A stretch of DNA of 64,000 bases from Trichoplax adhaerens (taxonomy: Eukaryota > Animalia > Placozoa), in contig NW_002060945.1 of the NCBI RefSeq assembly GCF_000150275.1, positions 9,440,011 through 9,504,010 of the forward strand. The letters are read 5' to 3'. Shown piece by piece: positions 401 through 35,800 of this stretch; the stretch's first letter is position 1, and each line of letters opens with the position of its first letter. The translations under genes and the position numbers were made by a program. The notes under the pieces are model-generated. The model was not told the origin of the DNA and did not search any database. It was given only the letters and a program-made list of their open reading frames with translations.

Positions 401-429
401 TAATGTAGCTACTGTACAGTGCGCACTAC

Positions 430-6257: not shown

Positions 6258-6559
6258 TACGATACAATTCCTTGGAGCCGTGAAATAGTATAAAGTCATC
6301 AATAAAGCAAAATAATATAATATACGCGTACGAGCAGACTACCCGCGGCTGTATTTCACATTAGCGGTTACACATATTAAAGTAATTTTTTTGTTGGTAA
6401 TTCCTTTTGTATGATACGATTCCTTGATAACGTGAAATGGTATAAAGTCATCCATAAAGCAAAATAATATAATATACGCGTACGACCAGACTACCCGCTG
6501 TATTTCACATTAGCGGTTACAAATATTAACGTAATGTTTTCGTTGGCAATTCCTTTTTG
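6258..6559. repeat. Local tandem duplication, 2 x ~150 bp
   Basis: gtgaaatrgtataaagtcatc..aaagcaaaataatataatatacgcgtacga..gactaccc..gctgtatttcacattagcggttac occurs at ~6280 and again at ~6432. Confidence 0.9.
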
Positions 6560-14509: not shown

Positions 14510-17500
14510 ATGATTTGGCGTGGATCACTTATGACTGTAGTGTTTTGCCTTCTCTTACCTGGCTACTACGCACAAGGTATACATAGCGATGTTTCATATG
14601 CTACTATACAGTATACGCGTATATCTAATTAGGTTCAGTATTCTTATACACTATACACTATTATATATTTGGCAATATCTATTATATTATTATTATAGTT
14701 TTAAAATTGTTACGGTAAGAAAAGGGTATTACTTTTAAACAAATTACATGATGTGAATACAAAGTATCGTAAGAACTGATCTATATCACAATCAATGATT
14801 ACAATAATAATTTTAGAACACTGTGGAAAAAAATTTATATATCTATAAACCATATTAATCAAAATAGATATTATGAATACGTTCCAAAAATATTTACTAC
14901 GATAATGTTAATATCGTTCTCAATTTCGATGTTTTACAGAGTACTACGAATTTACCACACATCCAAGCAATGTCTACCTTGCAGGAGGCGTACCTCAAGT
15001 TGTGATGTCTTGCAGAGCCGCACCTGTAACAGGCTTAACTTGGACTTATCAATGGCGACTAAATAATGATTATCTTTCTGCCCAACAAAGAGGCAATGCT
15101 AGATTCACCGGATTTAACAGTAATGAGCTTACAATAGGATCCGCTACTAGCGATATTTACGATACCACTCTTTTCGGTAAAGGTAATAATTTCACATGTG
15201 TGGCAACCAATAATAATGGACCTATAACGTCAAGAATCGCAAATATCTTCCGTGTTGGTAAGTTACACCCATAGAAATAACGTTTAACTCTTATATAACT
15301 TATATGCCATACGGTACTCGTATTTAAAACGCTATCATAAGGAATTAACATAATAATATTTCCGAATTTATTATATACCGTACTAAAATATCAGATATTT
15401 TCAGGTAAACCATTCTTTCAAGGAAACAGTAAATTAAACAAAGAAGCTACCTTTTTAGCGGGTCAAGCTACAAGTATCCAATGTGGTGACACAAAATTTC
15501 CGGAAATTCCTATCACCTTATTGTGGCATTACACGAGAAATGAATTACGCTTTAATCCATCATCCGATGGAAGAATTGCGATCGCCTTAGATGGCACTCT
15601 ATATTTCGCTAACTTACTTGTTTCTGATGCAACGCGTTATCGTTGTGGTGTAAGGCCTACTCAACCAATCACAAGTACAAATATATTTTTTTCAGGAAAC
15701 ACAACATTAGCTATACAGCCAAGAGGTTAGTCTAAAATAAATCAAGTTACACCTCGAACAGCGACTACATCTTTTAAAATTTCTTTAGTACTTCGATGCT
15801 CTAATTACTATTAACGTAGTAGCAGCAGTTGTCAAATATTACAATTTATACATAAATTATTCCAGACATACTAATATAATGTAGAATTTTAATTTCTAAT
15901 AGTCATCAAACGTTGTACTTTTTTCAAATAATACATTTTTATTATTGTACTTGCAATTAATATTTACTAATCTATAACTTGTAAATTTTAATCTATCCTT
16001 TTCGTAAATTTTTCATCACAGTTTGCACCGGTCAATTATGTGGTAAGTACACAAATAGTTCGATATGATATTGTGTATTACTTGTCTTTTATTATGAGCT
16101 TTTACTTTTTAAGCTAAGTAATATTAACTTACATACTGTATAATATCGTAACAGATTTTGGTCCAGAATTGCATAAAAGGTCCGGTAATGTGCAAGCAGT
16201 GATCGGTTCATCGATTACCTTAGAATGTATCCCCAAAGGAAGGTATCTATTGATAATACGGAAATCAAAGATGTATAGCTGGGTTACTCGCTCAATCATG
16301 AGGCCTATTATGAAATGTAGTAGTTTTCCTTTACATAACATTTAACAGTTATTAAATTACAGTGTAAACTTATTCATTACGTCGTATCTAAACTCAAGAA
16401 TTTCAATTTACTATTTCAGACCAACTCCTATTATCAGCTGGTGCTTGTATAACTCTAACACTCAATTATGCAACAACATCCAAGCATCATCTAAGTACGC
16501 TTATAGTCAAGCCAGTAATAGGCTAACTATTAATAATCTCATTCCTCAAGATGCTGGAACGTATAGATGTATAGCAAAAAGTATAAAATCTATACAATGG
16601 GATAATGTCTTACAAGTCGATCGTAAGTTAGATTTTGACAAGATTATAATTATCTAGCAAAGCTGTCCAAAATAATATATTGTGTTAATTGACAATGAGG
16701 ATTGCTTCGATTTTTAATTTAATAGCAAAATTGACATGGATAACAAGGTTTAGATCAATGTCTGCTTCAATCGAAGATACTGTAACTTTTCCTTGTACTG
16801 CATATGGCACGCCGCCATTAAAATATACGTGGTATAAACAAGCCATTAAATTTCCCCTGACTAATAGTCGATTCATTATGTCGAGTACAAGTGGAAATTT
16901 AACAATAAGAAATCTATTAAGTAATGATACCGGCGTTTACCAATGCGTTGTTGAAGACAGATATAACAGAATTGCAAGTGGAGGATACTTCGAAGTCAAA
17001 GGTTAAATATTAGCTTATAGCTATCTTTACAATGATTAGCTGTAAATCTACTTAGTTAAAAAGTTGAAGGTTATACTGTATTTTGATATAATAAATTCTC
17101 AAAAGTAAATAAGTATGCTAAACTGTTATTTAGTCGATCCGTATATTACTTATTGAGATAAAATTATATCGGTAACAATTCAGTACAGTACTATTAACTT
17201 TCTTATTCACTTATATAGTAGTCTTTAAATCGTTATCTTGCTTAGTCTATGTTCTCTAAATTTATTCTACTTTGTTAAATTGATATAGTATTTGCAGCCA
17301 GATTTACTGAGACGATGCAACAACAGCAGATTATTCAAGTTGGTCCATCAGCACAAGTAGTATGCCCAATTGACGGAGGTCCAAAACCGACCATTGATTA
17401 CTTCTTTAACGGAAACCAGATATCATTGTTGGGCTCTAATAAATATGAAAGATTACGAAATGGTAATTTATTGGTTAAGAATGTCGTCTTAGCAGATGGA

Positions 17501-20500
17501 GGAAACTATACTTGTAGAGGAAGAAATCGATATAATCCAGTGAATACCTACGTTACTGGTTGGGCAAGGGCTCATGTTTACCGTAAGTTAACCCTTATGC
17601 TATGACGTTTTCTGATATAGATTACAAAAGCTATCAATAATTTAGATAGTATTATTTTAAAACTTCCGTTTAAGCTAATACAATACAATCCTATATAATT
17701 CAGTAGATATTCATCTTGATCGTAATCTCATAAGATCTATTAAAATTGTTATTTTTCATTTTCGATAGTTCTAAAATCAGATCTAATCAATTCTATATAT
17801 ATCTTACCGACAAATATCCTTTCATCTCATTAGTCTTATCCTTCTTAGTATCCGTAAAAATATTACATCATATTTCTTGCCTATTGTTTTTAGTGTTTAA
17901 CAATTAATTGACGTAGTCAGAGAGATTGTAAGACTTGATACGTATTTAACCCTATTTTTTAACAAATATTCTTAAAGCTACAACTTCTTATCCATGCAGT
18001 GATAGTTTATTAAGACTTCTCTACAGTACTTTCATTCTCATCTATATCCGATAACAAAGTATAAGTTCGTATGAGAAAGATACCTTGAAGACATTACTTG
18101 AGTAGATTGTACTTTAAAGAGCTCTTAATTGAATTGCTCTAACGTTTACAGAAGCGACTAAAATTCTGGAAGGTCCAACTACCCGAAGCTATCGTATTGG
18201 CTCTACAGTAACTATCCCATGCAATGTTACAGCTGATTCTAGAATTAGGAATGCGGTTACAGTAGTATGGCAAAGGAATGGTCAATCTATACAAGCTTCA
18301 TCCAAATATGTACTACGAAATTTATATCCTAATTACGCCTTGACTATTAACAACGCTCAAATCGCAGAAAGTGGAAATTACTCATGTAGAATGACTGTTG
18401 ATGTCGCTCAATTACCAGGAAAAACAATTACTGATACTAAAATTGGAAACATAGCATTCAATGGTAAGATTAATAGAGAAAATTCACTGAATCAGCCTAG
18501 ATATTCTCAGTCATTATATTGAATAGTACCGTATACGTTAAGTAGCGATATAAGACGATAGCAAAACATTAAGATAATTACTATTCGTAGCAGTTGACTT
18601 TTATTTCTGTTCTTAGCTGTTCCACTACCTCCTACTCTTGCTTCTGGAAGATTAGTAAATAGCAGTATGCTATTTCTTAACTGGACTTTCGCAACCGATA
18701 ACGAAAACAATAGTCCTTTGAAAAAGTTTGTCGTCCAATTCAGATCAAACTATATCTCAACTATTCGAACACTTTTGGAAATACCCAACATCAACCAACG
18801 AAGTACCTTCATAACTCCATCCCCATATATAACATACACTTTATACGTAGCTGCAGAAAACGGCGTTGGCCTTAGCCAAAGGAGTAATCAATTACAAATT
18901 AGAAATCCTAATACAGCTGGTACGATTAATATAATAGTTACTCCTCTTATGACTATCATCAATTTTTTAATTATATCATTTACGCGTATAAAACGACATC
19001 TAACAAATAGTATAACAATGTGCTAAAGTTACTGTTGTTAATTCTTAAAAGCCATTTTATCGATAACTTTTTTCAATAATGAGCTCACTAACACAAAGTA
19101 ATTTCATTTTTAGTTCCTACCGACGCACCTACTAATCTTTATACGCTAGTCAATTCAGCAGATTTAACAACATTAACCGTTTACTGGACAGTAAGTTATT
19201 TTTAATATTTCTAGGTTTCTCACTACGTTTATATCTGTTTCAACTATATTTACATTAATCTTTGATATAGTTACTTATCATAGTTTCATATAAGATAGGT
19301 GCACGTTTTCGTTAAAACTAGTCAAAAATTTAAATAATAATATCTAATTTATTTTCAGCCACTAACAGGTGAACAAGCTAATGGCCCAAACTTAAGGTAT
19401 CTGTTAAGATACAGGAAGAGTAATACTGCCAACTCTTATAAGACCATCGACGTAACCGGCTCTAGTTACACAATTTCCGGATTAGAAGCTCGAGTTAATT
19501 ATGATTTCGATCTTCGAGCGCGTAACGATATTGGCCCAAGTGCAGTATTTGCTTACTATCTCGGATGTACATGCGAACAAAGTAAGAAAACTGTACACCT
19601 TGCTTCTTCTAATTTATGATTAATTAGATAGTACCAAGTTATTCTCTACTAGTCTTTTATAATAAAATTTAATTTCGTCTTGATTAGAAACAAGCATAGT
19701 TATTCAAGTAACTAAGTTATTGTTAACCATTAATACAATTATTATCGAAAACTAATGTTAATTAATGTATCTATATACTTTATACTGATGATATCAAGGG
19801 CCTGTCGGAATACCATTCAATGTAACCGTAGTAGTAACAAATGCAAACATCGTTATTAATTGGTTACAAGTACCTGTGCATTTGCAGGGCGGAAAAATCA
19901 CGGCTAATCGGGTAAAATACTAAACAGAGTCCTATTGTGTTATCACTATAGATATAAATTAATCAAATGTACTAGATCTTACAAATCGCGGGTATACCTA
20001 TACATCAATTATTTAGTAAGCTAAACTGTATTCTGTCAGTCAATAACGTTAATAATTTCTTATATTCGGAATGAATGTATGTATGTATACATACGCGTAC
20101 TTACACAAATCGTTTATACGTACATGCTAAACATCGTAGTAGATAGTAGAAATAAACTTACTACAAATTTAAAAATAAATTTCGAATACTAAGAATATTT
20201 ACGATTTAACTTTTTTATATTACAGGTTAGATTAACACAAGTTACTTCTGGAACACAAAATACCATCTTAATCAATTCTACAACTAGTATTACTCTTTAC
20301 GGTTTAGCACCTAATACTAATTATACCGTTGCTATTAGCGGCAGAAATGCTGCTGGAGAAGGTCCCTTTTCTGTTCCTAAAACCTTTAGAACTGGCAGCA
20401 TAGGTAATAAGGATAATATATGTATTAGTCTTTACCGGTAATATACGTACAATAGAGAACTTTAACAAATTAAGCTACAAGACGGTATTTTTCTTCTTTT

Positions 20501-21929
20501 CTCGTACGCTAATTGTAGATACAGCATATAAACCAGTTTTAGGCTTTCCTATTAGCAGTGATATAACTAATGATACTGTTACTTTACGATGGACTATCGT
20601 TGGTCAACCGTTTTATTTCCAGCCTCAATACAGACTTTCAAGTAAGTAATGTACCGCAATGTTAAAGTTTTCTATCATTTTAGCTGCTACTTCAGCGATA
20701 GCAAAGAAGAACAAATTATTGCTAAACCGAGCTAATTACTACATAAGAAGCGCTTTAAAAGAATTCTCTCTTGTTTGTGACTTTATTTTTATTAGATCAA
20801 ATATGGATATCTAGTAATAATCTTACAAGGCAAACAGCAAATGTAGTAATAAGAGGACTTCTACCGAATACAGCTTACGAATTCAGAGTTAATGCGATCT
20901 ATTTTAGCGGACGAAATATATCAAGCGATATCCGAGCTGTACAAACTAAAAGTAAATATAAGATCACTTGTAGTAGCAAGAATGAACTAACTTTTCTATT
21001 AGTTAGACGATACAACTATAACCCATACAAGTAGTAATGAAAAATCTATGTATATCTGATATACTTAGCTAGATTGATTCCTTTTTCGCTTTATAGATAC
21101 TATCGGACAACAAGTTCGACCTTTTTATCAAGAAGCATGGTTTATCATTATTATTGTTATAGCTTGTCTAGCCCTTATTATAGCTATAGCTGTCCTACTT
21201 TGCAAAGGCCGTAAGAAAGCAGGTAAATTTCCAGGTTAGTGTGAATGTTGATGATCTTATTATAGTAGCCTACTAGCTTATATGTCTTCTATTACTTTTA
21301 AAATTAATCGGCTATTTTTTTCAATTTCTTTGTTTATATCGTATTCATATTAGCAGTTCCAAAAGGCAAACAGTAAGTCAACCTTTTCAAAGTTTTCTTA
21401 ATTATAGAGTAATTTCGATAGTCTACATTGATTTATTAGCTATTATTTTTCTTAATATTTTCATATGCGCAGACTTTATTCTTTATTAATGTAACAAGAA
21501 TATTAGAGCTATTATATATTGACGGATTACTACTATTAATGATTTACTGTTAGGAATCCACCCATTCCACCGCCTCCTGAAACAACGAACGAGGAATATG
21601 ATACCATTAAGAGACCACCTTTGCCTCACCCTCAGACTGAAACAATCCATCATGGAGATGAGTCGTTGCTTGACAATAATAGTATCGATAGCCTTGAACA
21701 ATATGCTGACTTGCCTGGATTAAGTAAATTTAATGAGGACGGCTCATTTATTGGTGAATATGGCGACAAGGAAATGGACAGATACAGCCAATATAATCAT
21801 GAAGGTGTTATCGAGCCAACTGGTAGTCAATATGGCGCAGTCCGGGATGATGCAAGCTATCATACTAATCATACTAATCATAAGACCCTTGATGTTGATA
21901 ATAGCACTACTTTTTCAACTTTTGTCTAA
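14510..21929 (+). CDS. L1-family (neuroglian/NrCAM/SAX-7-like) cell adhesion molecule, paralog A: signal peptide, 6 Ig, 4 FN3, TM, ankyrin-binding tail; 19 coding exons, ~1200 aa
   Basis: Exons 14510-14576 (MIWRGSLMTVVFCLLLPGYYAQ), 14940-15257, 15405-15725, 16022-16042, 16155-16242, 16420-16622, 16726-17001, 17289-17582, 18152-18463, 18617-18919, 19114-19190, 19359-19581, 19799-19911, 20226-20403, 20519-20641, 20796-20951, 21097-21234 (TM WFIIIIVIACLALIIAIAVLLC), 21357-21372, 21554-21929 sum to 3603 nt in frame. Ig signatures (DAGTYRC, DTGVYQC, DGGNYTC, ESGNYSC), the L1-type Ig2 motif DGTLYFAN, FN3 motifs (GLAPNTNY, GLLPNTAYEFRV) and tail DSLEQY..FNEDGSFIGEY..STFV are present. Confidence 0.93.
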
Positions 21930-23159
21930 TTTCTGGCATAGCTCAGCATCTTCTCAACTAGAATATTTAAATCGTTCAAATTCAGTATTTTATGTGACAG
22001 CAAGATTCCTTTTCTTGATCTGCATATTATGCCTATGCAGTATTATTAACTAGTTAAAAGTGATGATAAAATCCATTTAATAATTTTAACATTGTTTACT
22101 TGGAAAAGATCAGATCATAGTAATAAGAAAAGAAACAATCGTGGCAAGTTACAATTAATTTAATATTGGATCTAGGTATTCATTTTTTAATCTCTCCAAT
22201 AATAATCGAATCATAATTCAATAATGTTACTACAGCAATACCGCAAGGTCCTAAGGGCTACAATTAATTCTTGTCACATCAAGTAATCGGTCTCACTCTT
22301 ATATTCTGAAGTAATCTATGCATATAACAATGTTCATTCATGATTGTGTAAGAACAACACCTACTCGTTGGATTATATTGTAATTTGATCACGTATGGAA
22401 GCTTAATACTAGAAAATTATAGAGAATCTATAATTGAAAATCATTGGAATTACGATATAAAGAAATAGATTCTGGAAGATCTTGTTAGAGTAGATTAACT
22501 CTTCATTTTTTAGGGATAGAGCGATAACTGAACGGTGATTTTGGACACATTTATAGCTATGTTACTAGCATCTATCGCATATAAATTGAATATATTTCTA
22601 CTACTAAAAGATTCATTTATACTATTTATTCACTTTTAATATCCTGAATACTCTAAGTCCATAAAAGATCGAATACGAAACCCGCAATAATGTCAGGAAG
22701 TAATAATTCATTTTGTTTAATCTGTTAGTTTTGATATTTACTAGCGTGGTGTAATCGCCTGGCATGTATTCACTGGACCATTAACTTTGACTTTATATAA
22801 TTATAATTGTACTTGTGAAAGGATACATTTGTACAAATATCCTATCTTATTCCTATTGCGGCAATATCATAGCGGGTCTTATTTAATCCAAGTTTATCTA
22901 TTACCGTATTCATCATTCATTGATTTATCCAACTTAGTAATTTTAAGAAGTTTTCCCTGTATATTGATATTAAAGATAATGATGATATTCAGCTTGCACT
23001 TCGGTTGCAAATTGTATGTATGTCCAAAATCTTACGATTTCAACCATCATTACTTATACTAGTATACTTTCATTTTAGAAAGATACTGTGGCATTTTTAC
23101 TTTAATAGCATTGATAATTTTCAAGATTTGTGTCCGATTTGTTAAATAGAGTAATAAAA

Positions 23160-24450
23160 GAGACAGAAGTTATGCATTCAATTGTGTGATGACTTTTATC
23201 CATTTAGCTAAATAGAAAATTAACATCAGCAGCACAATATTGAATGCTACTTGCAAAGTATAAGTAAGACAGCATAAGTAATCCCTAAATTTATTATTCT
23301 CTACTACGGGACTTTAATCTACGTAAGAAGCTTTGCTTAGTGCATACTTTCATAACTCTAGTTATAATGTAGAAAGATTAGATCGCATTATTTCTTAATA
23401 AAGGCGATAAAAGTTATCCAATCGATCGTTACGGTAGCTTTCATTAATATACCGAAATAAAAACTAACGTCAAGACAGCATCAGGTACTACTTTCATTTG
23501 TATATAAGACAGTAGTAGCTTTACCCATACTTAAATTGATTATATAATATTCTCTACTAAAAGATTTCTTACTTGTACATTATAACTTCTGTCTAGTGGA
23601 TGCAGTTAATAAAGGCGGTAGAAATTATACTGTACAATCGATTTTTATGATAGCTTTCATTAATTTAGTGAAGTAGAAAACTAACATCAAGACAATATCA
23701 TGTACTACTTTCACTCGTAACCAAACCTTTCTCAGGTCTAGGTTGTAGCTTTATCTATATTTATATTAAGTATTCTCTACTAAGAAATTTCTTGTTTATA
23801 CCGTAGTTCCTGACATATAAAGAAACTAGATTACATTTTTCATCGTAAAAGAAATCAAAGTGATACAATCGACTATAAGCATAATTTTATCAATTTAACA
23901 AAACAGAAACTCACCATTATCAAGACAATATTGAAAGCTACTTGAATTCTATATAAGACATTACTAACTACCCCTAAATAGATTATTCACTATTACAGAA
24001 TTTCTTGCTACAAATAAGAAGCTCCACCTGGTGCATGACTTTTATGGTTCTAGTGACAATGTAGAAAATTATATTACGTCTCTTTACGATAAAGATGATA
24101 GAAATTATGCAATAGATCATGATAATTTTTATCAACTTAGCAATATATAATACATAGAAAGTTATCATATCACTAAACATCGAACGCAATTGGTGGTATA
24201 TGGAAACAACGTTAACTACACCTAATTAAATATTCTCTATTAAAGAATTTCTTACTTGCATAAAAAGTTCTACCTAATACGTCATATGACTCTCATAGTT
24301 CTAGTAATAGAAAAATTATATCAGGTAATTTCGTCATAAAAGAGATAGAATAGTAAAATCGATAGTTACGATGACTTCATCAATTTAGCAGAAATATCCT
24401 ATATAAGGTAACGCTAACTGTATCTAAAGTAATTATTTTACAGCAGTTAT
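23160..24450. repeat. Degenerate tandem array, ~235-bp unit, ~6 copies (3' of gene A)
   Basis: Motif tt(c/t)atyaatttag..aaatagaaaactaacatcaagaca..atca..tactacttt recurs near 23195, 23440, 23656, 23887, 24129 and 24375. Confidence 0.75.
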
Positions 24451-27400
24451 ATAAAAAGCTAAGCGTCGTGAATGAATTCAATAGCTCTATCTGCATTACA
24501 GAAAGACTACTCCACTATTATTTCAGCGTAATATTGTGGAATAAAAAAAACACTGTCTTACTAGCCAAATATCTTTCTGTTGTGTGTGAATTGGCTTAAA
24601 AATTACTCGCATACCATAAAATGCTACTTTACACTATAATAAATAAGAGCAATATATTTATCTTACTATTCATGTGCTAACTATCACTTTTGTAGACATT
24701 AGCTTAATACAGCCCCTATTTGTCGACAATACTACAATGAGTTCTGGAAATATAATAGAGTAATAGAAAGACAACTGTATTCAGAAAACCTAGTACTTTA
24801 TTATGACTTATGCGAGGCTAGTGTAATCTGTTTTCATTTCGATGCAACAGTTGTTCATTATTTAATCTTATAGTACTCGTCTATCGCTATACTTTATTAT
24901 ACTGCCACTCTGCTAATACTTTCGGTTTTATATTAATCTATCATTATATATCGTGACTATATAAATAAAATATCGTCATCAGTTCTATACCTAATAATTA
25001 TGTTTCAGATTGATATTGATACTGATAATATAATCTGAATGATAATATCAGTATCAGCATCAGTGCATCACGAATAGTAACCCAGCTACTGCAGTATTAT
25101 CTTTCAATCGGTATAGTTTAGGATCTAATATAGTTGTATGAAGTTAATATTTTCATTCCTTAACTATTTGTAAAAGAATTAAAGGATAAAGAAATTAGAG
25201 GTTATTCATGCGATCTACTTCTATGAAATTTTAAACGAAATCATAGATAAAAATATCATTCTTTACGAGTAACATAATGCAATGTTATAACAGTGTTTTG
25301 AGCAATTTTGTACAGCAGTATTTGAAGCATCTGAACTGGTAAATATCAGTTTGCCCAAAAGAAAAATTATTGATATGTACTAAAGACAACATTTCTCAAA
25401 TCGATGGCCATTATCATCTTTAGTGATAGACGTGTTGAAAGTAATCGCAGTCATCGACAAGTCAAAGTACTGCACTTTTGAGTCTTGTAGTGATGCTCCC
25501 CATAGCTGATTATAAAATAGCTATATTCGATATAGTTAGGTTTCTAAGAATAGACGTTATCGTAGTGCTAATATTATTTTAGATGATTGTTAACTACTAT
25601 ATTAAAAATTGTTAATCACTAATATTAGCCAGTTGGCTAATTATGGTACAAGATTTATTTGACTTGATGTACTGTAATTATGAAGATATCCAACACCGAA
25701 AGGTGCTAAATATTAATAGAAGAGTAGTGATATTTTAGGCAGAATGACTCAGATTGTAGAAGATAATGATGACCTATTTAAGGAAAAGTACTCTATTTGA
25801 TGACTCAAGTCTGATTGTAGCTAATTATATTATCATAAGTAGATTTATCAACATGTATTTTAGAGCTGTAGAGATGAGCATAGACATAGACGAGACTTCA
25901 CTTTGAGCTCGAAATACTTTAGACTAGATTCTTGCTAGTAATTCATTCTTGCTCTACTATTCTTCAACTATGTAATAAAAGCCTTTTCTTAAATTCCCTC
26001 TTGACGAAAGTTACAGTACCACAAGGAGACAGTAACGGATTGCTTCAACGGAACCCATAACTACTTAACCCGTGAAAATAAATTAATTATTACTATTTTA
26101 AGACAATGACTACTTGCACCACTTGAAAGATCTACGTATTACCTGTAGCTATACAATGAGATTGAAAAATTGCGATTGTTCCAATCATGCATCATCGATG
26201 GCTTTAGCACAGTTTAATACTACTAACAATGATTCATTACTTCTTCTTCTAATATAGTAATGTAAACTGGCTGACTATATGACTCAAATAAACACTGTAT
26301 GCATAACTATTGTTGGAGGAATGCTCTAGTGGGGTAATGTGTATTCTCTGCAAATATTGGACAATGCCAACTATTGTCCGGGCAACATCTTTCAAGTCTG
26401 TAATTTTGTAAGAGTCATAAAAGAGTAAGTTTTAATCTACTACAATAGATGAAGTCATCGATTTAGAGAAATGAAGAATCGCCAGAAGGACAACTGCTGT
26501 TAAGTAGAATAATACGAAACCATGACTTCTCAGCGTTGTTTGGCTAGAGCATATCATTAATTAAGAAAATATCATGAAGGTGGAAAAAAAGCCAAAATGG
26601 CAATTGAATTCTAATGTGAGTAATTTTTAAATCAACTTGTAGACTCCGACTTGTCAGCTACAAGTGCCTCTATCGGATTCAATTTCAATTTAGATCTTTA
26701 CTGATAGCACTATCAGTGTCAAATGAGAAGAAAGTGTAGAGTAAAGGATATATTATAAATGATTGTAATCCGTGTCTGTTGTGTTGGATACATTAGAAGA
26801 AAGGAACTGTAAGTTAGACTTTCTAACCGTTAACATTTGAAATGATGAAATTAAACTGACTTATTAATTCTAATCATTCAATAAGCGGATCAAGTAGCGA
26901 TGTTAGTTTTCTATATACAATCATTAGTCTATGGTTTTAATCTCCGTCTGCTATTCATCATAGTAGCACAGTTAAAATAGCATTATACAATACCTCTATT
27001 CTCTATCATTACCCAAACGAGATCATGATACATAGCAAATGCTTCGTATCATTGTCTTATGCTTTATAAAGTGACAATAAAAATGTCATAAAACGGCCAG
27101 TAAAAACGAGTTGAAGAGGTTCATATCGCATGACAAAACGACAAACATTGGCTAATAATCCATCATCGATTCGAAACGATGACTAGAATAGCCATGATAG
27201 ATCTATTTAACAATAAAAAATGAAACGATCGGTATTGAAATCGTATACTGCTAAGTGATGGCCATGTTTTCAGATGGTCTACTTCGAGCCTAAATAGAAA
27301 TTGATTGAATATACTTCAGTAATTAGCGCTAAATAGCCATAACTCATCATCTTTGACTAATTACTATAAATCCAATATTTTTTCTATCTCTTATTTGCAT

Positions 27401-30400
27401 AACTGATCTATATAGGAAAATTATTCAGTCTAGAGACAGTCGGCAATACAAAGAGTTGTCACGTCATCGTTGGCTAGGCTTGGCGTTGAAGAGGTGCTTT
27501 ATTTATTGTATAATCTAATTGAAATTAAAGTACCGCCTCGGTAAAGAAACCCAACCGTCTATCTAGGACTGCAATGGTCTATCACTATTGTCTACTATTG
27601 TTTCATTATTCTTATTTTTACTGACTTATCAATTTGAATCTACCCCTAACTGATTGCTGCACTGTATACTAAAGCTATTTTTTCAAGTCGCATCGGTGCA
27701 TGCATATTAATTCTTATTCTTTTCTGAATATTCTGTCCCTCTTATTCACTGTCAGTAGTTTTTGCTTCCTTGTCTTTATGTTAAGCGATCATAGAAGGAT
27801 TATTCTGTAACGACTGACTACAGTACTTATAACTAGTATTTGTTTGCTATTTGTAAGCAACGTGCGTCCTTGGAATTAGATCAACCCATTCCACTTGCAC
27901 CGTAGAAAGCAAAAATCGATTTGGTATTTCGTTGATTATTCATTTATCAAATAGACGGTAAGACACTATTCTATAAATTTCAATTTAATTTTTGAATTGT
28001 TTTTGGAGACGATATCCTTAAAATAAAATTGATTCCATTAACGTAGTCGACTTTTATATTGGAAAAAATTAAAATTTTAATAATACGCAACGTGGGTGCT
28101 ACTTTTCCGTTTATTATTCCCATATTATTTTTTTTCCAACTTGGATTAATTCTGTTTGTATTGGTGTGGTACTACCGTAGTTTAATAACTTTAGTTTCTA
28201 TAAAGCATGTCTCATAGCACCTTTGCAAGTGTCTAATTGCTACTTCAAATCGTCTTAAAATGGGACATAAAATAACAAACGCCTTCAAAATTGCAAACTG
28301 TTGTCACCAATAATATCAAAAATGCCCCTACTTTTATACTAAGACAACGTCAATATTGATCACTTATCCATCCATTTTTTCCTTTTATTTTATCATAGCT
28401 AACACATGAAATACGTATCGTACTTAATCAAATTTAATAGACAATATCATTTGCATTGGTACCACGCACAATTTAAATAATCTAGCTAACTCGCTAGTCA
28501 TTCTATTACATCTTATCAATGCGATATTAGCCGATAACGAATCATAGCGTAATATTTTTCAAAGTAACATCTTAACAGTGAAAGCTTATTGTGTTGCTCT
28601 ACAATATAGTCTACAGTCGTAGAGTGAACAAACTATAAAGTTGACATTTAACCTATTTGTTCACAAATATTACATTAACAAGCGATAAAATATAGAATAT
28701 TACATGTAATATATCGAGCACAAACCGTCGATTATGAAAACGTTAAAAATTATATGAAAACTATCTGACGCTCGGCACGGTATCATATTGGTATATGCTA
28801 GCGTCTACGAGCAAATTGAAAATATTTTGTATACTTTACGATTTACTAGGCATTAATTCAATTTTCAAAGACTACCTGTATACTGGCTATAGAGTTCAAG
28901 TACAAGCTACAATAAATTGCTGCACATTGACGAGACTGCTTGTAATAATTGATACTCGATATTGTAGAACTCCTAAAACGCTTTGTTCTCTACTTATTTT
29001 GTATATTTTAGCGGAATAGAGAAAAGAGAAAGCACTGTCTTCTTTAGTATTTAAGCTATTCTTACAAGTGACCAAGTATACTAGAATTTTTCGACTAATA
29101 GAAGTTCACACTATACTTTTATATTCTTGGATTAAAATATCGACGTCTATCTAGCACTTTAAAATGATTTTATTATTCGTCTTTACCCTTGAAATTATAG
29201 TATGTAGGCAGTAAAGTATAAGTGTAGCGGGCAAGATAGCTACTATGCCTTGAGAATACGGCATACGATATCATGATAAAAAGGGGACTTATTAAAGCAT
29301 ACCAATACACGTTCATTTTTACATTACTGTGTGCAGCTAATTCTTAGGATCCACGTTAAACTAGACTACCCAGATTATAAAACCGAATTAAGCTTTATTA
29401 CATTATCAAACTGTAACTGCATCTATAGCGAAAGATTGAAGAACTCCCGATATACTCGATGCATACGCTTAATAAACTCTAGTGCATAACATATTAAGTA
29501 GCGATAGTAACATTATCATAACGTTTAATAGGAATTGGATTACCATATCCTCCTGGAGCACAAGCATTACATCTTACTGTAGCGCATACATTAATAATTT
29601 TGGTACTAATTAAGAATTCAACTTGGAGTTTACTAACTCGACATCTTAAACTCTAATTTTTTGTATCTTGGCCAACTTTGAAAGCATATTCTTATTGACA
29701 CAACTTTTCGATAAAGAATTCCTGAGTTGATCAATACGAGTAAGGCTGTTATCTCTTCTACTAAAAGGCAATATAGTTAAAATTATCAAGTAGCCTTTAT
29801 AAATGCTTTACTGTAATAGGAAAACAAACAGATTCCCTCGAACATAAAGCAATCGTCTAGATTATCAAACATTATCGAGATTCATAATCCGTAACCAAGG
29901 AAATTTATTACAATACTAGTAGAACCTTGTATTTTTTGTCGATCATTAACCTAAATATGCTCTGCCAGGAAAATTAACATCCGAACTATTTACCATCAGC
30001 AACAAAAAGGATCTATTACGCAATCAATCAACTAAGTCAAATCGGTAGTTTATTATATGGCATACCGGTAGTAGTTCCTTTTCCTTATACCGTGCGCGAA
30101 TATTACATAAATATAATAATAGCATTATTTCGTTACTAATAGTAAAAACATGAGCTATAAACTTTAGTACTTTAAGCAATTATCATCCATATATTAGTCT
30201 TCAAAAGGATAGCTTTTTGCATGCTACCTACCTTGAATAGAAACGATTGTTTCAGGAGCCTCTTTCGATGTAAGACATACGGTATCAACCTTTTAATACA
30301 TTTACTAAAAAATCTGATTTTCACCCCGCTATATATTTGATATTTTACGTGTAAACATACGCGTATCATTATAGTGGGTAAAAGGTATCCTAAATATTAA

Positions 30401-31549
30401 TCTATCAACAATGATAAAATGATGATTGGAAATTAAAAGTACGGAAAATGCGTCTTGTTATAGTCGGCATAAATTTTAAAGAATTAGACCAGACTTCTAG
30501 AGACTGCAATGTAATTAATTCAAAATGTTATGTTGACTTATTATATGAATAAATTATACAAAAAATAAGGAATAATGTTTGCAATACTTTAGACATTTTA
30601 GCTTGCCTTGGATTATAGATTTCATTATAACTGTAGATGTGGTATAAAATTATTAGATAAACAGTTCTTACTCTCATGTATTATAATAATTATAAGAATC
30701 CAAACTTTAATGAGTCGTGAGTATTAAAATAATTACAGCGAGAGTACTGCGTTCAAAAGTAGGAGATCGTATTTTATTTACGGAATACTATTGATGACTA
30801 TCTGGTAATAGGGAACATGACATATTGATAAAAAGAAGCGATTTACAAAGACAATGCGATGCAACTGTAATATATTTCACGAAAAATATTACTAAATTGC
30901 AATCTTTGCATCTGCGGAAACGAATTATGCACTAGTTTTATAATATAATATTTAGTTTATAGCATCCTGTATACTACTGTCGAAAATGAATCTGTCGTAC
31001 GTGATTTAATGCGCTAGTCCATGAACATAATAATTAAAAACAAAATTAATAAAAATACACAGAGACAATTATTACTCACAATTATTCATCTACTTTATAA
31101 TCAGGTGGGTGTCATAGCGTAATATGAATGAAATAAGCAATTTACTATTGCTAACAGTGTCCCAGTTTTACATCAAAGTTTATCGTCTAACGTGTATACG
31201 AGCATTTAGTGAAATTTCAGACATTGAACAAATATAGTAAAATATATGACCGATGGTGTACCATGCTATACACTTCCTGATGAGATTACAGTATCAAATT
31301 GTAATCACTAGCATACGGTTTACGTTATACTATTCACTATAGGAATACATTTTACCATTGTGCCTATTTTTATTTATGTGCACCTAAGGATCAAAAATTT
31401 TTCTGTTTTTCTTCATCTTCTTGTAATCAAACTTACTTATATTAGACCTTAAAGCTTAAAATCATTCTTAATTGATTATTAAATATAACTTAATTTAATG
31501 TATTTAATCTATTAGCTCAAGAATAGACTACTGCTTATTGCATTACTAA

Positions 31550-31914
31550 TCTAAGCACAAAATGATCCTTATTTTTTAAAGGGTTATATTGTCAGAGGAA
31601 ATAGCTCTTGCATTAACTTAATACAATATAAATAGTACCATAGCATGGTCTTACAAGATCCAGACCCAAAATGAAATAAATATTTATGGCAATTTTAACA
31701 GCAAGATGCTATCCAAGACTGTTTTGGTACTTCCAAAGTGAATTTAATCTGTCCGTCAGTATATTCATACTTTCTTATCCACTTAGTTACAGCTATAGAG
31801 AACAGCTTCCTCGACTGTACTGTTAATTAACATAGCTAATAGCTACCAGTACTATATAAAGTGTCAGCTTTAAACACCGCTACTACATTCGGTAGTCGCT
31901 AGCGGTAGTTAGAG
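31550..31914 (+). mobile_element. ~365-bp segment present only in copy B intron 1; possible degenerate Helitron-like insertion
   Basis: Copy A reads cgctaa|tttaaagaagtc (13571-13588). Copy B has ~365 extra bases here, starting TC after an A, with a subterminal hairpin ACCGCTA..TAGCGGT (31876-31906), but no clean terminal CTAG. Confidence 0.35.
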
Positions 31915-32849
31915 TATTAAAGAAGTCAATAGTCAAGATAGCGCTGATTGAGAGATTAGACAAAACATAGACAAAAACTGTACATTGGAGTGTTGGGATA
32001 TCTATAGTTAAGGGCGCGGTACTACATTATAACCGACTTGAAATAATAATAATGGCCTAAGAAAAATTTACACGTACATTAAAATGTAATGAATTAATTG
32101 TCCCTATTTCATTCAACTGTTGACAGCATAATTGATGCTATCTAGTACTCCAATATGCGCGTATTTCTACATACTGTATTCGCATATAAATTCGCCTAAA
32201 AGCATAATTGCATGACTCTCTAGTGCCAGAGAAGAAGAAGGAAAATTACCGATACTGTGAAGTCATTGTAGTCCAGATAGATGTATGCATAGTGAGTCAG
32301 TTAATTTTTCTTTGAATAAGAAAGATTACGAAAAGAACTGCAATTATATCACGAAGCATTCAGTATGTTATAATGTGATAAATACATAAAAATTTAACAA
32401 TATCCCCACATAATATATGATCTACAGCTTAAAAGAATAATTTTAGTAATCGTACAGTAGGACTAGTTTCGATTTCTGTCATTATAATATACGGATAGTA
32501 AGGCTGTCACAAAGTCTTTATATATTCTACCACTCTTAAACCTTACAAAATAGCATAATCAGTATAATTTTTCTAATATTTATCGTCATTACTAGTACAT
32601 GCATATTTCGATAGAAGAGATCTCTTTCTAATTACTTTTAAAACTCAGATCGTCAGAGTCGTTGACTAACTCTACCATCTTGAGCAATACTATTTATATA
32701 TAATTAAAGCTAAGGTATCATAAGTTATAGATGTCGTTCCCTTGCAGTAGTTTTTTGCATCAATTAACAACGTATGCATCTTTTCTGTCACCTATAGCCC
32801 AATAAAACACATCGACTTTGGCGTTGGACTCTAAACTCATCGCTCCATC

Positions 32850-35800
32850 ATGATTTGGCGTGGATCGCTTATAACTGTAGTGTTTTGCCTTCTCTTACCT
32901 GGCTACTACGCACAAGGTATACATAGCGATGTTTCATATACTATTATACACTAATATACAGTATACGCGTATATCTAATTGCTTTAAGTTTTCTGTATAT
33001 CAATGCATATTTAGTAATAATATTAATCATTGTTATTTCAAAATTGTTACGGTAAGAGAAAGATATTACTTTTAAACAAATTACATGATGTGAAGATAAA
33101 GTATCGTAAGAACTGATCTATATCACAATCAATGATTACAATAATAGTTTTAGAACACTGTGGAAAAAAATTTATATATCTATAAACCATATTAATCAAA
33201 ATAGATATTATGAATACGTTCCAAAAATATTTACTACGATAATGTTAATTTCGTCTTCAAATTCGATGTTTTACAGACTATTACGAATTTACCACACATC
33301 CAAGCAATGTCTACCTTGCAGGAAGCGTATCTCAAGTCGTGATGTCTTGCAGAGCCGCACCTGTAACAGGCTTAACTTGGATTTATCAATGGCGACTAAA
33401 TAATGATAATCTTTCTGCCCAACGAGGCAATGCTAGATTCACCGGATTTAACAGTAATGAGCTTACAATAGGATCCGCTACTAGCGATATTTACGATACC
33501 ACTCTTTTCGGTAATAGTAATAATTTCACATGTGTGGCAAACAATAGTAAAGGAGCTATGACGTCAAGAATCGCAAATATTTTACGTGTTGGTAAGTTAC
33601 ACCCATAGAAATAACGTTTAACTCTTATATAACTTATATACCATACGGTACTCGTATTTAAAACGCTATCATAAGGAATTAACATAATAATATTTCCGAA
33701 TTTATTATATACCGTACTAAAATATCAGATATTTTTAGGTAAACCATTCTTTCAAGGAAACAGTAAATTAAACAAAGATGCTACCTTTATAGCGGGTCAA
33801 GCTACAAGTATCAAATGCGGTGACACAAAATTTCCGGAAATTCCTACTACCATGTTGTGGCATTACACGAAAAATGAATTACGTCTTAATCCATCATCCG
33901 ATGGAAGAATTGCGATCGCCTTAGATGGCACTCTATATTTCGCTAACTTACTTGTTTCTGATGCAACGCGTTATCGTTGTGGTGTAAGGCCTACTCAGCC
34001 AGACACAAGTACAAATATATTTTTTTCAGGAAACACAACATTAACTATACAGCCAAGAGGTTAGTCTAAACTAAATCAAGTTACACCTCGAACAGCGACT
34101 ACATCTTTTAAAATTTCTTTAGTACTTCGATGTTCTAATCACTATCAATGTAGTAGCAATAATTGTCAAATATTACAATTTATACATAAATTATTCCAGA
34201 CATACTAATATAATGTAGAACTTCAATTTCTGATAGTCATCAAACGTTGTACTTTTTTCAAATAATACATTTTTATTATTGTACTTGCAATTAATATTTA
34301 CTAATCTATAACTTGTAAATTTTAATCTATCCTTTTCGTAAATTTTTTATCACAGTTTGCACCGGTCAATTATGTGGTAAGTACACAAATAGTTCGATAT
34401 GATATTGTGTATTACTTGTCTTTTATTATGAGCTTTTACTTTTTAAGCTAAGTAATATTAACTTACATACTGTATAATATCGTAACAGATTTTGGTCCAG
34501 AATTGCATAAAAGGTCCGGTAATATGCAAGCAGTGATCGGTTCATCGATTACCTTAGAATGTATCCCCAAAGGAAGGTATCTATTGATAATACGGAAATC
34601 AAAGATGTATAGCTGGGTTACTCGCTCAATCATGAGGCCTATTATGAAATGTAGTAGTTTTCCTTTACATAACATTTAACAGTTATTAAATTACAGTGTA
34701 AACTTATTCATTACGTATCTAAACTCAAGAATTTCAATTTACTATTTCAGACCAACTCCTATTATCAGCTGGTGCTTGTATAACTCTAACACTCAATTAT
34801 GCAACAACATCCAAGCATCATCTAAGTACGCTTATAGTCAAGCCAGTAATAGGCTAACTATTAATAATCTCATTCCTCAAGATGCTGGAACGTATAGATG
34901 TATAGCAAGAAGTATAAGAACTATACAATGGGATAATGTCTTACAAGTCGATCGTAAGTTAGATTTTGACAAGATTATAATTATCTAGCAAGTCAATCAG
35001 AAATAATATATTGTGTTAATTGATAATGAGGATTGCTTCGATTTTTAATTTAATAGCAAAATTGACATGGATAACAAGGTTTAGATCAATGTCTGCTTCA
35101 ATCGAAGATACTGTAACTTTTCCTTGTACTGCATACGGCACGCCGCCATTAAAATATACGTGGTATAAACAAGCCATTAAATTTCCCCTGACTAATAGTC
35201 GATTCATTATGTCGAGTACAAGTGGAAATTTAACAATAAGAAATCTATTAAGTAATGATACTGGCGTTTACCAATGCGTTGTTGAAGACAGATATAACAG
35301 AATTGCAAGTGGAGGATACTTCGAAGTCAAAGGTTAAATATTAGCTTATAGCTATCTTTACAATGATTAGCTGTAAATCTACTTAGTTAAAAAGTTGAAG
35401 GTTATACTGTATTTTGATATAATAAATTCTCAAAAGTAAATAAGTATGCTAAACTGTTATTTAGTCGATCTGTATATTACTTATTGAGATAAAATTATAT
35501 CGGTAACAATTCAGTACAGTACTATTAACTTTCTTATTCACTTATATAGTAGTCTTTAAATCGTTATCTTGCTTAGTCTATGTTCTCTAAATTTATTCTA
35601 CTTTGTTAAATTGATATAGTATTTGCAGCCAGATTTACTGAGACGATGCAACAACAGCAGATTATTCAAGTTGGTCCATCAGCACAAGTGGTATGCCCAA
35701 TTGACGGAGGTCCAAAACCGACCATTGATTACTTCTTTAACGGAAACCAGATATCATTGTTGGGCTCTAATAAATATGAAAGATTACGAAATGGTAATTT

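What the first reader, a model, noticed from the sequence alone, without database searches (positions are those of the whole stretch)
14940..34059. Twin L1-type adhesion receptors with a diversified Ig1-Ig2 tip: candidate cell-recognition system
Seen (hand count). Ig1 exon (14940-15257 vs 33277-33591): 13 amino-acid changes and a codon deletion vs 3 synonymous, clustered at the C-terminal strands (GKGNNFTCVATNNNGPIT vs GNSNNFTCVANNSKGAMT). Ig2 exon (15405-15725 vs 33739-34059): 9 amino-acid changes vs 3 synonymous codons. The 147-nt intron between them differs at only 2 sites. Ig3 has 4 changes, Ig4-Ig6 none and the four FN3 domains 6. Exons more diverged than the adjacent intron is the reverse of neutral expectation. 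Established: Ig1-Ig4 form the L1 horseshoe and Ig2 is central to homophilic binding. Inference: selection maintains two binding specificities on a common scaffold, as in isoform-specific or allorecognition IgSF systems (Dscam1, Hydractinia Alr), or reflects escape from a pathogen ligand.
Basis: partly seen in the sequence, partly recalled or inferred. Interest (0 to 1): 0.85.

Follow-up and report, generated by a model that had tools for sequence, protein, structure and literature searches.

The report
Twin Trichoplax L1 genes, partly homogenised
Two neighbouring copies of an L1/neuroglian-type adhesion gene in the placozoan Trichoplax are kept almost identical over most of their length by gene conversion. 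Their first two Ig domains lie in an older, less recently converted block and drift apart at about the neutral rate, so a two-specificity recognition system is possible but not shown.

Summary

The inference from them does not hold.
- Both genes are real and intact (6 Ig, 4 FN3, TM, FIGEY tail). Each has its own 5'UTR exon and each appears in spliced RNA contigs.
- Identity along the 17-kb tandem duplication falls in tiers: about 80% outside, 90% at 13578-14726, 95.6% at 14727-15898, and 99.1% at 15899-21234.
- Both inner change points lie in introns.
- Inside the Ig1-Ig2 block, exons (4.9%) and non-coding DNA (3.75%) do not differ (p=0.39). Only intron 2 is low; introns 1 and 3 are as diverged as the exons or more.
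- dN/dS for Ig1+Ig2 is about 1 (CI 0.4-2.8). That is higher than in the tail (0.29) and the core (about 0.5), but not above neutrality.
- Differences cluster in introns and in the cytoplasmic tail as well as in the tip.

What remains suggestive: copy B changed five residues at the tip of the Ig1 F-G hairpin, gained two glycosylation sequons, and has I217D in the Ig2 F-G loop.

The scan noted a similar conversion-with-variable-patches pattern at another locus of this genome (s1-784841).

The parts
8144..24787 (+). Duplication unit A (whole gene A with promoter region and 3' flank)
   Evidence: Self-BLAST pairs it with 26098-43029. Flanks are 76-85% identical, 13578-20039 is 96.5% and 20079-21442 is 98.5%.
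26098..43029 (+). Duplication unit B (whole gene B)
   Evidence: There are no N in the window, so the tandem arrangement is contiguous sequence.
9987..10017 (+). 3' end of gene A's non-coding first exon (its start is not mapped)
   Evidence: The loose end of the A-type RNA contig of run X5 matches here exactly. A GT donor follows.
27927..27957 (+). 3' end of gene B's non-coding first exon
   Evidence: The loose ends of the B-type RNA contigs of runs X11 and X18 match here exactly. A GT donor follows.
14458..14576 (+). Gene A exon with ATG (14510) and signal peptide; B equivalent 32798-32916
   Evidence: RNA joint 14577-14939 GT..AG. One silent and one M/I difference between the copies.
14940..15257 (+). 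Gene A Ig1 exon; B equivalent 33277-33591
   Evidence: RNA joints. Weak Pfam Ig_3 hit. AF2 model with pLDDT 90.5 has an I-set fold. 13 amino-acid changes plus a codon indel against 3 silent; omega 1.28.
15258..15404 (+). Intron 2 (147 nt), 2 differences
15405..15725 (+). Gene A Ig2 exon; B equivalent 33739-34059
   Evidence: RNA joints. Best PDB sequence matches are the Ig2 domains of contactin-1/-2, axonin-1 and neurofascin. 9 amino-acid changes; omega 0.68.
14727..15898 (+). Intermediate-identity block (4.4% diverged) holding Ig1, intron 2, Ig2 and parts of introns 1 and 3; B equivalent 33064-34232
   Evidence: Maximum chi-square change points at 14726 and 15898, permutation p<0.001. No significant heterogeneity inside the block (p=0.088).
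15899..21442 (+). Recently homogenised core (about 0.9% diverged over 15901-21234), Ig3 to the TM exon; B equivalent 34233-39741
   Evidence: Exons 0.64% against introns 1.20%.
16022..16042 (+). 21-nt micro-exon between Ig2 and Ig3, identical in B (34356-34376)
   Evidence: RNA joints in runs X5 and X11.
16155..18463 (+). Ig3 (16155-16242 + 16420-16622), Ig4 (16726-17001), Ig5 (17289-17582), Ig6 (18152-18463)
   Evidence: RNA joints. Pfam I-set/Ig_3 hits.
18617..20951 (+). Four FN3 domains: 18617-18919; 19114-19190 + 19359-19581; 19799-19911 + 20226-20403; 20519-20641 + 20796-20951
   Evidence: RNA joints up to 20226. Later borders come from AG/GT sites and phase, conserved in B. Pfam fn3 hits.
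21097..21234 (+). Transmembrane exon; B equivalent 39397-39534
   Evidence: Hydrophobic stretch in the translation. Same sequence as the start of Trichoplax sp. H2 protein P0013.
21354..21372 (+). 19-nt cytoplasmic micro-exon (AVPKGKQ); B equivalent 39653-39671
   Evidence: Predicted from the phase requirement and AG/GT sites. The peptide is present in annotated H2 protein P0013.
21554..21929 (+). Last coding exon of A with FNEDGSFIGEY and stop; B equivalent 39985-40360
   Evidence: Pfam Bravo_FIGEY E 5.6e-15 (A) and 8.7e-16 (B). dS 0.22, dN 0.065, omega 0.29.

Best explanation
An old tandem duplication produced two L1/neuroglian-type adhesion receptor genes, about 1201 codons each. Each has a signal peptide, six Ig domains, four FN3 domains, a transmembrane segment and an ankyrin-binding-type FIGEY tail.

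The two ends of the unit keep the old divergence: promoter and 5'UTR exon at one end, cytoplasmic tail and 3' flank at the other. The tail has dS of about 0.22. The interior has been overwritten repeatedly by gene conversion between the copies. The tracts share roughly the same 3' limit but have different 5' limits, which leaves nested tiers of identity.

Ig1-Ig2 lies in the next-to-youngest tier, so it has had longer than Ig3-TM to collect differences. In that time it collected replacements at about the neutral rate, filtered towards conservative changes. This means weak constraint on the surface of the two tip domains, possibly with a few adaptive changes in copy B.

Shown: the tiers, their intronic borders, dN/dS, transcription of both copies, and separate first exons. 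Inferred: conversion as the mechanism, and weak constraint as the reason for omega of about 1.
For: - Flanks are 76-85% identical, while 13578-21442 is 96.5-98.5% identical.
- Change points at 14726 (10.2% to 4.4%) and 15898 (4.36% to 0.92%) both lie in introns; p<0.001.
- The outer edges of the homogenised region coincide with large indels: extra B sequence at 31555-31916 and at about 39741-39876.
- Inside the block, exons are 4.87% diverged and non-coding DNA 3.75%, p=0.39.
- Ig1+Ig2 has Nd 23.5 and Sd 7.5, omega about 0.9-1.0, CI 0.42-2.76. This matches omega=1 (p=1.0) and rejects omega=0.29 (p=0.0015).
- Differences are clustered (17 neighbour pairs within 5 nt against 8.5 expected, p=0.0002). 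Clusters also lie in intron 3 (7 in 30 nt), intron 6 and intron 13.
- The tail shows a comparable burst in copy A: 7 derived residues within 14 positions.
- Replacements are more conservative than random ones: mean BLOSUM62 +0.18 against -0.47, p=0.03.
- Ig1 identity is 88% for A-B but 61% and 57% to the outgroup fragment P0001. Tail identity is 86% for A-B against 81-85% to the outgroup fragment P0014. This fits homogenisation of Ig1 after the duplication.
- Independent RNA contigs reproduce both haplotypes, so the mosaic is not an assembly artefact.
Against: - Relative to their own introns, Ig1-Ig2 exons are more diverged than the other exons: odds ratio 1.31 against 0.53, z=2.14, p=0.033. 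Something does distinguish the tip.
- The block brackets exactly the two tip exons. That is also what selection against conversion of the tip would produce.
- Copy B changed 5 of 7 residues at the tip of the Ig1 F-G hairpin (scan p=0.014). That motif is otherwise conserved in A, in outgroup P0001 and in paralogue C.
- Copy B gained two N-glycosylation sequons.
- I217D lies in the Ig2 F-G loop and A231T in its G strand. Ig2's F-G loop and G strand mediate homophilic contact in axonin-1, TAG-1 and neurofascin (PMC3406286).
- Among the rows shown in the read-laying table, the between-strain differences that are not A/B sites were replacements in Ig2 (3) and silent elsewhere (3). These numbers are very small.
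Confidence: 0.6

Rival explanations
1. Selection keeps the Ig1-Ig2 tips of A and B different, either as two homophilic or ligand specificities or as escape from a pathogen ligand. Conversion tracts that overwrite the tip are removed by selection, so only Ig3-TM is homogenised.
For: - Omega of about 1 in the tip against 0.29 in the tail and about 0.5 in the core.
- The exon/intron divergence ratio differs from the core, p=0.033.
- The block borders fall just outside the two tip exons.
- Copy B has derived changes at the Ig1 F-G hairpin tip, two new glycosylation sequons, and I217D in the Ig2 F-G loop.
- Ig2 is also the least conserved domain against paralogue C.
- Both copies are transcribed, from separate first exons.
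Against: - Omega is not above 1 (CI 0.42-2.76).
- Silent and intronic divergence inside the block (dS 0.05; non-coding 3.75%) is no higher than in neighbouring non-coding DNA. There is therefore no sign of an older, balanced core.
- Replacements are biased towards conservative changes.
- Similar clusters occur in introns and in the cytoplasmic tail.
- The N:S contrasts with other domains are not significant (p=0.07-0.09).
- The chance that both borders fall in introns is roughly one in four (my estimate from exon density).
Confidence: 0.22
2. Copy B's tip is losing function. After duplication, constraint on it is relaxed, and B is moving towards a non-adhesive or glycan-shielded variant or a decaying duplicate.
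For: - More derived Ig1 changes fall on B (6, plus the codon deletion) than on A (3).
- Two of B's changes hit positions that are identical in A, P0001 and paralogue C: T89N and I95M.
- B has two new sequons.
Against: - The relative-rate difference is not significant (p=0.3-0.5).
- B keeps every exon, splice site and reading frame.
- B keeps the structural invariants of the Ig fold.
- B-type spliced contigs occur in three runs.
- B's tail is identical in Trichoplax sp. H2 (P0013).
- In the tail, it is copy A that carries more derived changes.
Confidence: 0.12
3. The twin genes, or their patchy differences, are an assembly artefact: allelic haplotypes placed in tandem, or reads of two copies mixed in the consensus.
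For: The core is near-identical, and such repeats are hard to assemble from shotgun reads (general knowledge).
Against: - The flanks differ by 15-24% with many indels, and the window has no gaps.
- Independent RNA contigs reproduce A-type intron 1 (421 nt, 0 differences).
- They reproduce the A-type Ig1 exon.
- They reproduce B-type Ig1, including the 3-nt deletion.
- They reproduce B-type Ig2 (14 of 14 expected letters).
- They reproduce B-type intron 3.
- Each type is linked to its own 5'UTR exon.
- A separate H2 annotation carries the B tail.
Confidence: 0.03

Closest known systems
L1CAM family (L1, neurofascin, NrCAM, CHL1; Drosophila neuroglian; C. elegans SAX-7/LAD-1)
   Same: - Six Ig domains, then FN3 repeats, one transmembrane segment and a tail with the FIGQY-type ankyrin-binding motif (here FIGEY), matching Pfam Bravo_FIGEY.
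- Ig1 and Ig2 best match Ig1 and Ig2 of axonin-1, contactins and neurofascin.
- L1-type genes are already reported in Placozoa (PMC10084454; bioRxiv 10.1101/2020.04.29.068387).
   Different: - Four FN3 domains rather than five.
- Motif FIGEY rather than FIGQY.
- Present as a tandem pair that exchanges sequence, with a third paralogue nearby and four more FIGEY tails on another contig.
- Horseshoe folding and ankyrin binding were not tested here.
Concerted evolution of tandem duplicates by gene conversion (textbook cases recalled from memory: human gamma-globin pair, red/green opsins, RHD/RHCE)
   Same: - A high-identity interior between old, diverged flanks.
- Sharp borders unrelated to exon structure.
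- Introns and silent sites homogenised together with coding sites.
- Patchy residual differences.
   Different: No population or cross-species data here show individual conversion events. Only hints exist: the A-type contig of run X5 carries B letters at 15001 and 15181-15182.
Sidekick-1 / Sidekick-2 (paralogous IgSF adhesion proteins with homophilic specificity set by the N-terminal Ig domains; PMC5045292, abstract seen)
   Same: Two paralogues on a common Ig/FN3 scaffold whose N-terminal Ig domains differ.
   Different: - Sidekick specificity is shown by structures and cell assays; none exists here.
- The Sidekick paralogues are old and diverged along their whole length and are not being homogenised.
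Dscam1 isoform-specific recognition and Hydractinia Alr allorecognition
   Same: IgSF receptors in which variation in N-terminal Ig domains sets self-binding specificity (established knowledge, recalled).
   Different: - There are no arrays of alternative exons; self-BLAST finds no repeated exons inside either gene.
- There are only two variants.
- There is no evidence of high allelic polymorphism; the few strain differences seen are listed.

Membership tests
L1CAM family | Six N-terminal Ig domains | tested here: met
   Exons confirmed by RNA joints. Pfam I-set/Ig_3 hits for Ig3b, Ig4, Ig5 and Ig6, and a weak hit for Ig1. The Ig1 AF2 model has an I-set fold. Ig2 matches contactin/neurofascin Ig2 in PDB sequences at E 3.7e-5 to 3e-3.
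L1CAM family | Three to five FN3 repeats after the Ig domains | tested here: met
   Pfam fn3 hits in four successive exon groups. Four repeats.
L1CAM family | Single-pass transmembrane segment | tested here: met
   One hydrophobic stretch of about 23 residues in exon 21097-21234, read directly from the translation. No TM predictor was run.
L1CAM family | Conserved cytoplasmic tail with FIGQY-type ankyrin-binding motif | tested here: met
   Pfam Bravo_FIGEY E 5.6e-15 (A) and 8.7e-16 (B), above the curated cut-off. The motif reads FNEDGSFIGEY.
L1CAM family | Ig1-Ig4 horseshoe and homophilic binding through Ig2 | not tested
This needs the joined Ig1-Ig4 protein. The single-exon Ig2 model failed (pLDDT 40).
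Gene conversion / concerted evolution between tandem paralogues | Interior much more alike than both flanks | tested here: met
   76-85% in the flanks against 96.5-98.5% in the interior. Tail dS is 0.22, against about 0.01 in the core and 0.05 in Ig1-Ig2.
Gene conversion / concerted evolution between tandem paralogues | Homogenisation affects introns and silent sites as much as coding sites, with borders independent of exons | tested here: met
   Change points at 14726 and 15898 lie in introns. Introns 4, 5, 14 and 15 have 0 differences.
Gene conversion / concerted evolution between tandem paralogues | Paralogues within a species closer than orthologues between species in the converted part only | tested here: inconclusive
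   Ig1: A-B 88% against 61%/57% to P0001. Tail: A-B 86% against 81-85% to P0014. The two outgroup fragments are unnamed metagenome ORFs and may not come from one organism.
Dscam1-type isoform diversity | Tandem arrays of mutually exclusive alternative exons for variable Ig domains | tested here: not met
   No repeated exons within either gene in self-BLAST. One splice form appears in the RNA contigs.
Allorecognition loci (Hydractinia Alr type) | High allelic polymorphism of the N-terminal domain among individuals | tested here: inconclusive
   Contigs from four runs show only a few extra differences: F145L/L146S in X11, Y195C in X5, and K103N/G104S in the X5 A-type contig. Contigs hide rare variants, and 38 rows were not shown.
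Positive (diversifying) selection on Ig1-Ig2 | dN/dS significantly above 1, or exons more diverged than linked neutral DNA | tested here: not met
   Omega is about 1.0, CI 0.42-2.76. Exons 4.87% against linked non-coding DNA 3.75%, p=0.39.

The most novel reading that the evidence does not exclude
In an animal without neurons, two L1-type receptors share one conversion-homogenised stalk, while selection keeps their Ig1-Ig2 tips, promoters and tails distinct. Copy B would have remodelled and glycan-capped its Ig1 F-G hairpin and put an acidic residue in the Ig2 F-G loop. That would give two non-cross-binding adhesion specificities that sort cell types, or self from non-self.
Probability: 0.2. 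Interest if true: 0.65.

Novelty: new member of a known kind. Interest (0 to 1): 0.3.

Why it matters
L1-type adhesion molecules in placozoans are of interest because they predate nervous systems. If the two copies bound differently, that would be an early and simple example of a paralogue-based adhesion code.

On present evidence the locus is mainly a clean example of tiered gene conversion between tandem genes. It is also a caution: 'exons more diverged than one short intron' is not evidence of selection when conversion tracts set the local divergence level. The gene models given here would help annotation. They include two micro-exons, separate first exons, and copy-specific sequence in the 5'UTR, the tip and the tail. 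They would also allow copy-specific expression to be read from existing single-cell data.

Tried and rejected
Searches for orthologues and outgroups
- The representative search with the Ig1 exon found only one related fragment, P0001 (112 aa, unnamed ENA metagenome ORF, 61% identity). It found no full-length placozoan protein.
- The search for homologous proteins with the Ig1 exon found nothing, and with P0001 found only itself.
- The tail exon found P0013 (Trichoplax sp. H2) and P0014.
That rules out a codon model with an outgroup.
- The JGI metagenome scan with the Ig1 alignment found no relative.

Specific ideas tested
- A third genomic donor for copy B's F-G hairpin cluster (ectopic micro-conversion): only A and B match that stretch in the genome. 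Rejected.
- Ig2 outgroup: paralogue C aligns over only 46 residues, which is too distant to polarise changes.

Structure
- The AF2 model of the Ig2 exon failed (pLDDT 40), so it was not used.
- The Ig1 model gives strands only. Coordinates are not exposed, so burial of the changed residues could not be computed.
dN/dS was counted codon by codon from coordinates inside a script. The joined Ig1-Ig4 fold and dimer model were therefore left out.

Other
I repeated the step by reference.
- Read laying covered only 14400-20399 of copy A, so splice sites after 20403 rest on AG/GT sites, phase and P0013.
- All runs were contigs, so expression levels and the absence of a copy cannot be read from them.

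Full report
WHAT IS THERE

The window is AT-rich animal DNA (32% G+C, no N). I could check this in part: the tail of copy B is 100% identical to 'hypothetical protein TrispH2_008574, partial [Trichoplax sp. H2]' (P0013).

Self-comparison shows one tandem duplication, 8144-24787 against 26098-43029. Its outer parts are 76-85% identical with many indels. Its interior (13578-21442) is 96.5-98.5% identical.

GENE MODELS

Spliced contigs from public runs laid on 14400-20399 give GT..AG joints for every intron in that range. The remaining borders follow from AG/GT sites and reading phase, all conserved in copy B. Gene A consists of:
- a non-coding first exon ending at about 10017;
- 14458-14576 (ATG at 14510, signal peptide);
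- Ig1 14940-15257;
- Ig2 15405-15725;
- a 21-nt micro-exon 16022-16042;
- Ig3 16155-16242 + 16420-16622;
- Ig4 16726-17001;
- Ig5 17289-17582;
- Ig6 18152-18463;
- four FN3 domains, from 18617-18919 to 20796-20951;
- the TM exon 21097-21234;
- a 19-nt micro-exon 21354-21372, predicted from phase and present as AVPKGKQ in the annotated H2 protein P0013;
- the last exon 21554-21929.

That is 1201 codons. Pfam finds I-set/Ig_3, fn3 and, in the tail of both copies, Bravo_FIGEY (E 5.6e-15 and 8.7e-16). The motif reads FNEDGSFIGEY. PDB sequence searches pair Ig1 with axonin-1 Ig1 (weakly), and Ig2 with the Ig2 of contactin-1/-2, axonin-1 and neurofascin. These are therefore L1/neuroglian-type genes. 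L1-type genes in Placozoa are already in the literature (PMC10084454; bioRxiv 10.1101/2020.04.29.068387).

The genome holds a third, distant paralogue just beyond the window end, with the same exon layout (Ig1 34-38% identical). Four more FIGEY-type tails lie on another contig.

All searches were made exon by exon, by reference.

CHECK OF THE OBSERVATION

- Ig1: 16 substitutions plus a 3-nt indel, giving 13 replacements, a codon indel and 3 silent codons.
- Ig2: 15 substitutions, giving 9 replacements and 3 silent codons.
- Intron 2: 2 differences in 147 nt.
- Ig3: 4 replacements. Ig4-Ig6: none. FN3 domains: 6.

IS IT MORE THAN CONVERSION PLUS CHANCE?

Divergence along the alignment is stepwise. 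Maximum chi-square change points fall at 14726 (10.2% to 4.4%) and at 15898 (4.36% to 0.92%), each with permutation p<0.001. Inside 14727-15898 there is no significant heterogeneity (p=0.088). Both change points lie in introns. The outer limits of the homogenised region coincide with large indels.

The Ig1-Ig2 divergence is thus a property of a 1.17-kb block that also contains 213 nt of intron 1, intron 2 and 173 nt of intron 3. Within the block the figures are:

| Segment | Divergence |
|---|---|
| 3' part of intron 1 | 3.3% |
| Ig1 | 5.1% |
| Intron 2 | 1.4% |
| Ig2 | 4.7% |
| 5' part of intron 3 | 6.4% |
| Exons together | 4.87% |
| Non-coding together | 3.75% (p=0.39) |

Intron 2 alone is low. 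Fisher p=0.066 against the exons, and Poisson P=0.029 for one segment of five. Identical runs of 91 and 112 nt also occur inside the two exons. The longest identical run is not unusual (p=0.24). 'Exons more diverged than the intron' is therefore not a reversal of the neutral expectation. The exons are about as diverged as linked non-coding DNA.

SELECTION TESTS

Nei-Gojobori counts give omega 1.28 for Ig1 and 0.68 for Ig2. Pooled, Nd is 23.5 over 489.5 sites and Sd is 7.5 over 143.5 sites, which is about 0.9-1.0, with a binomial CI of 0.42-2.76. This equals neutrality (p=1.0) and rejects tail-like constraint (omega 0.29; p=0.0015).

Direct N:S contrasts with the other domains are not significant (p=0.07-0.09). 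For comparison:
- The tail, which lies outside the converted region, has dS 0.22, dN 0.065 and omega 0.29.
- The core has 10 N against 6 S, omega about 0.5.
- In the core, exons are less diverged than introns (0.64% against 1.20%, p=0.042).
- The exon/intron odds ratios of block and core differ (1.31 against 0.53; z=2.14, p=0.033).

So Ig1-Ig2 really is under weaker constraint than the rest of the protein, but nothing exceeds neutrality. The 22 replacements are more conservative than random single-base replacements (mean BLOSUM62 +0.18 against -0.47; p=0.03). That argues against decay. It is also not what a strongly diversifying interface typically shows.

CLUSTERING

Differences in the block are clustered: 17 neighbour pairs within 5 nt against 8.5 expected (p=0.0002). 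The clusters are not confined to exons:
- 7 differences in 30 nt of intron 3 (15799-15828);
- 6 in 9 nt of intron 6;
- a patch that straddles the Ig3 exon/intron 6 border;
- one in intron 13.

No third copy in the genome could have donated copy B's Ig1 cluster.

In the cytoplasmic tail, polarised with the outgroup fragment P0014, copy A carries 9 derived residues. Seven of them lie within 14 positions. Tight bursts of replacements are thus not special to the supposed binding tip.

WHAT REMAINS SUGGESTIVE

The Ig1 exon folds confidently as an I-set domain (pLDDT 90.5). With outgroup P0001 and paralogue C, copy B is derived at T89N, N91S, P94A and I95M. N92K is called by paralogue C only. These five positions form the tip of the F-G hairpin. 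Its motif is otherwise conserved in A, P0001 and C, and resembles that of axonin-1 and contactin-4. Five of 13 changes in a 7-residue window has scan p=0.014.

Together with Y44N, these changes create two new N-glycosylation sequons in copy B.

In Ig2, I217D lies in the F-G loop and A231T in the G strand. The F-G loop and G strand of Ig2 are what the axonin-1, TAG-1 and neurofascin structures use for homophilic contact (PMC3406286). This positional correspondence is my inference from a weak alignment, not a test.

Relative-rate tests are not significant (p=0.3-0.5 for Ig1, 0.17-0.27 for the tail).

EXPRESSION AND REALITY OF THE COPIES

- Run X5 (RNA by record) has an A-type Ig1 contig joined to A's own 5'UTR exon (exact match at 9987-10016). 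It also has a minority of B-type Ig2 contigs.
- Runs X11 and X18 have spliced B-type contigs, including the 3-nt deletion. These are joined to B's own 5'UTR exon (exact match at 27927-27956).
- X18's Ig2 contig differs from A by 14 letters, the number of A/B differences expected in that stretch. X5's unspliced contigs reproduce A-type intron 1 without a difference, and B-type intron 3.

Both genes are therefore transcribed from separate first exons, and the mosaic is not an assembly artefact. Because these are contigs, expression levels and absence cannot be read from them.

The X5 A-type contig carries the B letters at 15001 and 15181-15182. X11's B-type contig has F145L/L146S, and X5 has Y195C. 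Among the rows shown, the three non-paralogue differences outside the tip are silent. This is compatible with continuing exchange and with weak constraint on the tip, but the sample is tiny and 38 rows were not shown.

VERDICT

The object is a pair of L1-type genes under concerted evolution. The level of divergence of Ig1-Ig2 is explained by the tier structure of conversion. The near-neutral omega shows weak constraint on the tip, not demonstrated diversifying selection.

A two-specificity system remains a minority possibility (about 0.2). Cross-species loci, population data and binding assays would settle it.

The scan has noted the same kind of pattern at another locus of this genome, with conversion keeping most of the sequence alike and leaving variable patches (s1-784841). 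I did not test that note.

Noticed in passing
window 44135-46789 (-): A single uninterrupted 885-aa open frame encodes a class C GPCR (ANF_receptor E 6e-66, NCD3G, 7tm_3). It lies between gene B and the third L1-like gene, on the opposite strand, and appears intronless.
   Followed up: partly
L014 1689-9698 (G000:C1412:9505699-9513708, just past the window end); tail at C1412:9516923-9517171: A third L1-like gene on the same strand, with the same exon layout. Identity to A: Ig1 34-38%, Ig6 46%, FIGEY tail 44%. Ig2 is the least conserved domain.
   Followed up: partly
L006-L009 (G000:C1384, four places between 93964 and 256754): Four more Bravo/FIGEY-like tails (48-52% identical) lie inside long open frames of 377-391 aa. 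This suggests a larger family of FIGEY-tailed receptors in this genome.
   Followed up: no
window 16022-16042 and 34356-34376: A 21-nt micro-exon between Ig2 and Ig3 is identical in both copies and included in the RNA contigs of two runs. From memory, vertebrate neurofascin and NrCAM also have a small exon between Ig2 and Ig3.
   Followed up: partly
window 21354-21372 and 39653-39671: A 19-nt cytoplasmic micro-exon (AVPKGKQ) is needed to keep the reading frame between the TM exon and the last exon. It is present in Trichoplax sp. H2 protein P0013.
   Followed up: yes
window 21798-21839 (tail residues 82-95 of gene A): Copy A has 7 derived replacements within 14 residues downstream of the FIGEY motif. 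Copy B and outgroup fragment P0014 agree with each other there. This is a burst of change in a cytoplasmic segment.
   Followed up: partly
window 33408-33416 and 33540-33548 (B Ig1): Copy B's Ig1 has three N-x-S/T sequons against one in copy A. The new ones are NLS at residue 44 and NNS at residue 88, the latter on the F-G hairpin.
   Followed up: partly
window 15454-15456, 15603, 17904: Strain differences appear in the RNA/DNA contigs. X11's B-type contig has F145L/L146S, so codon 146 has three states (L, I, S). X5 has Y195C. X8 and X11 carry a 19-nt insertion in intron 8 behind 17904.
   Followed up: partly
window 1-420: Tandem repeat of about 140-146 nt units (about 90% identical) at the window start. 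Further short tandem repeats lie at 6257-6557 and 59969-60583.
   Followed up: no
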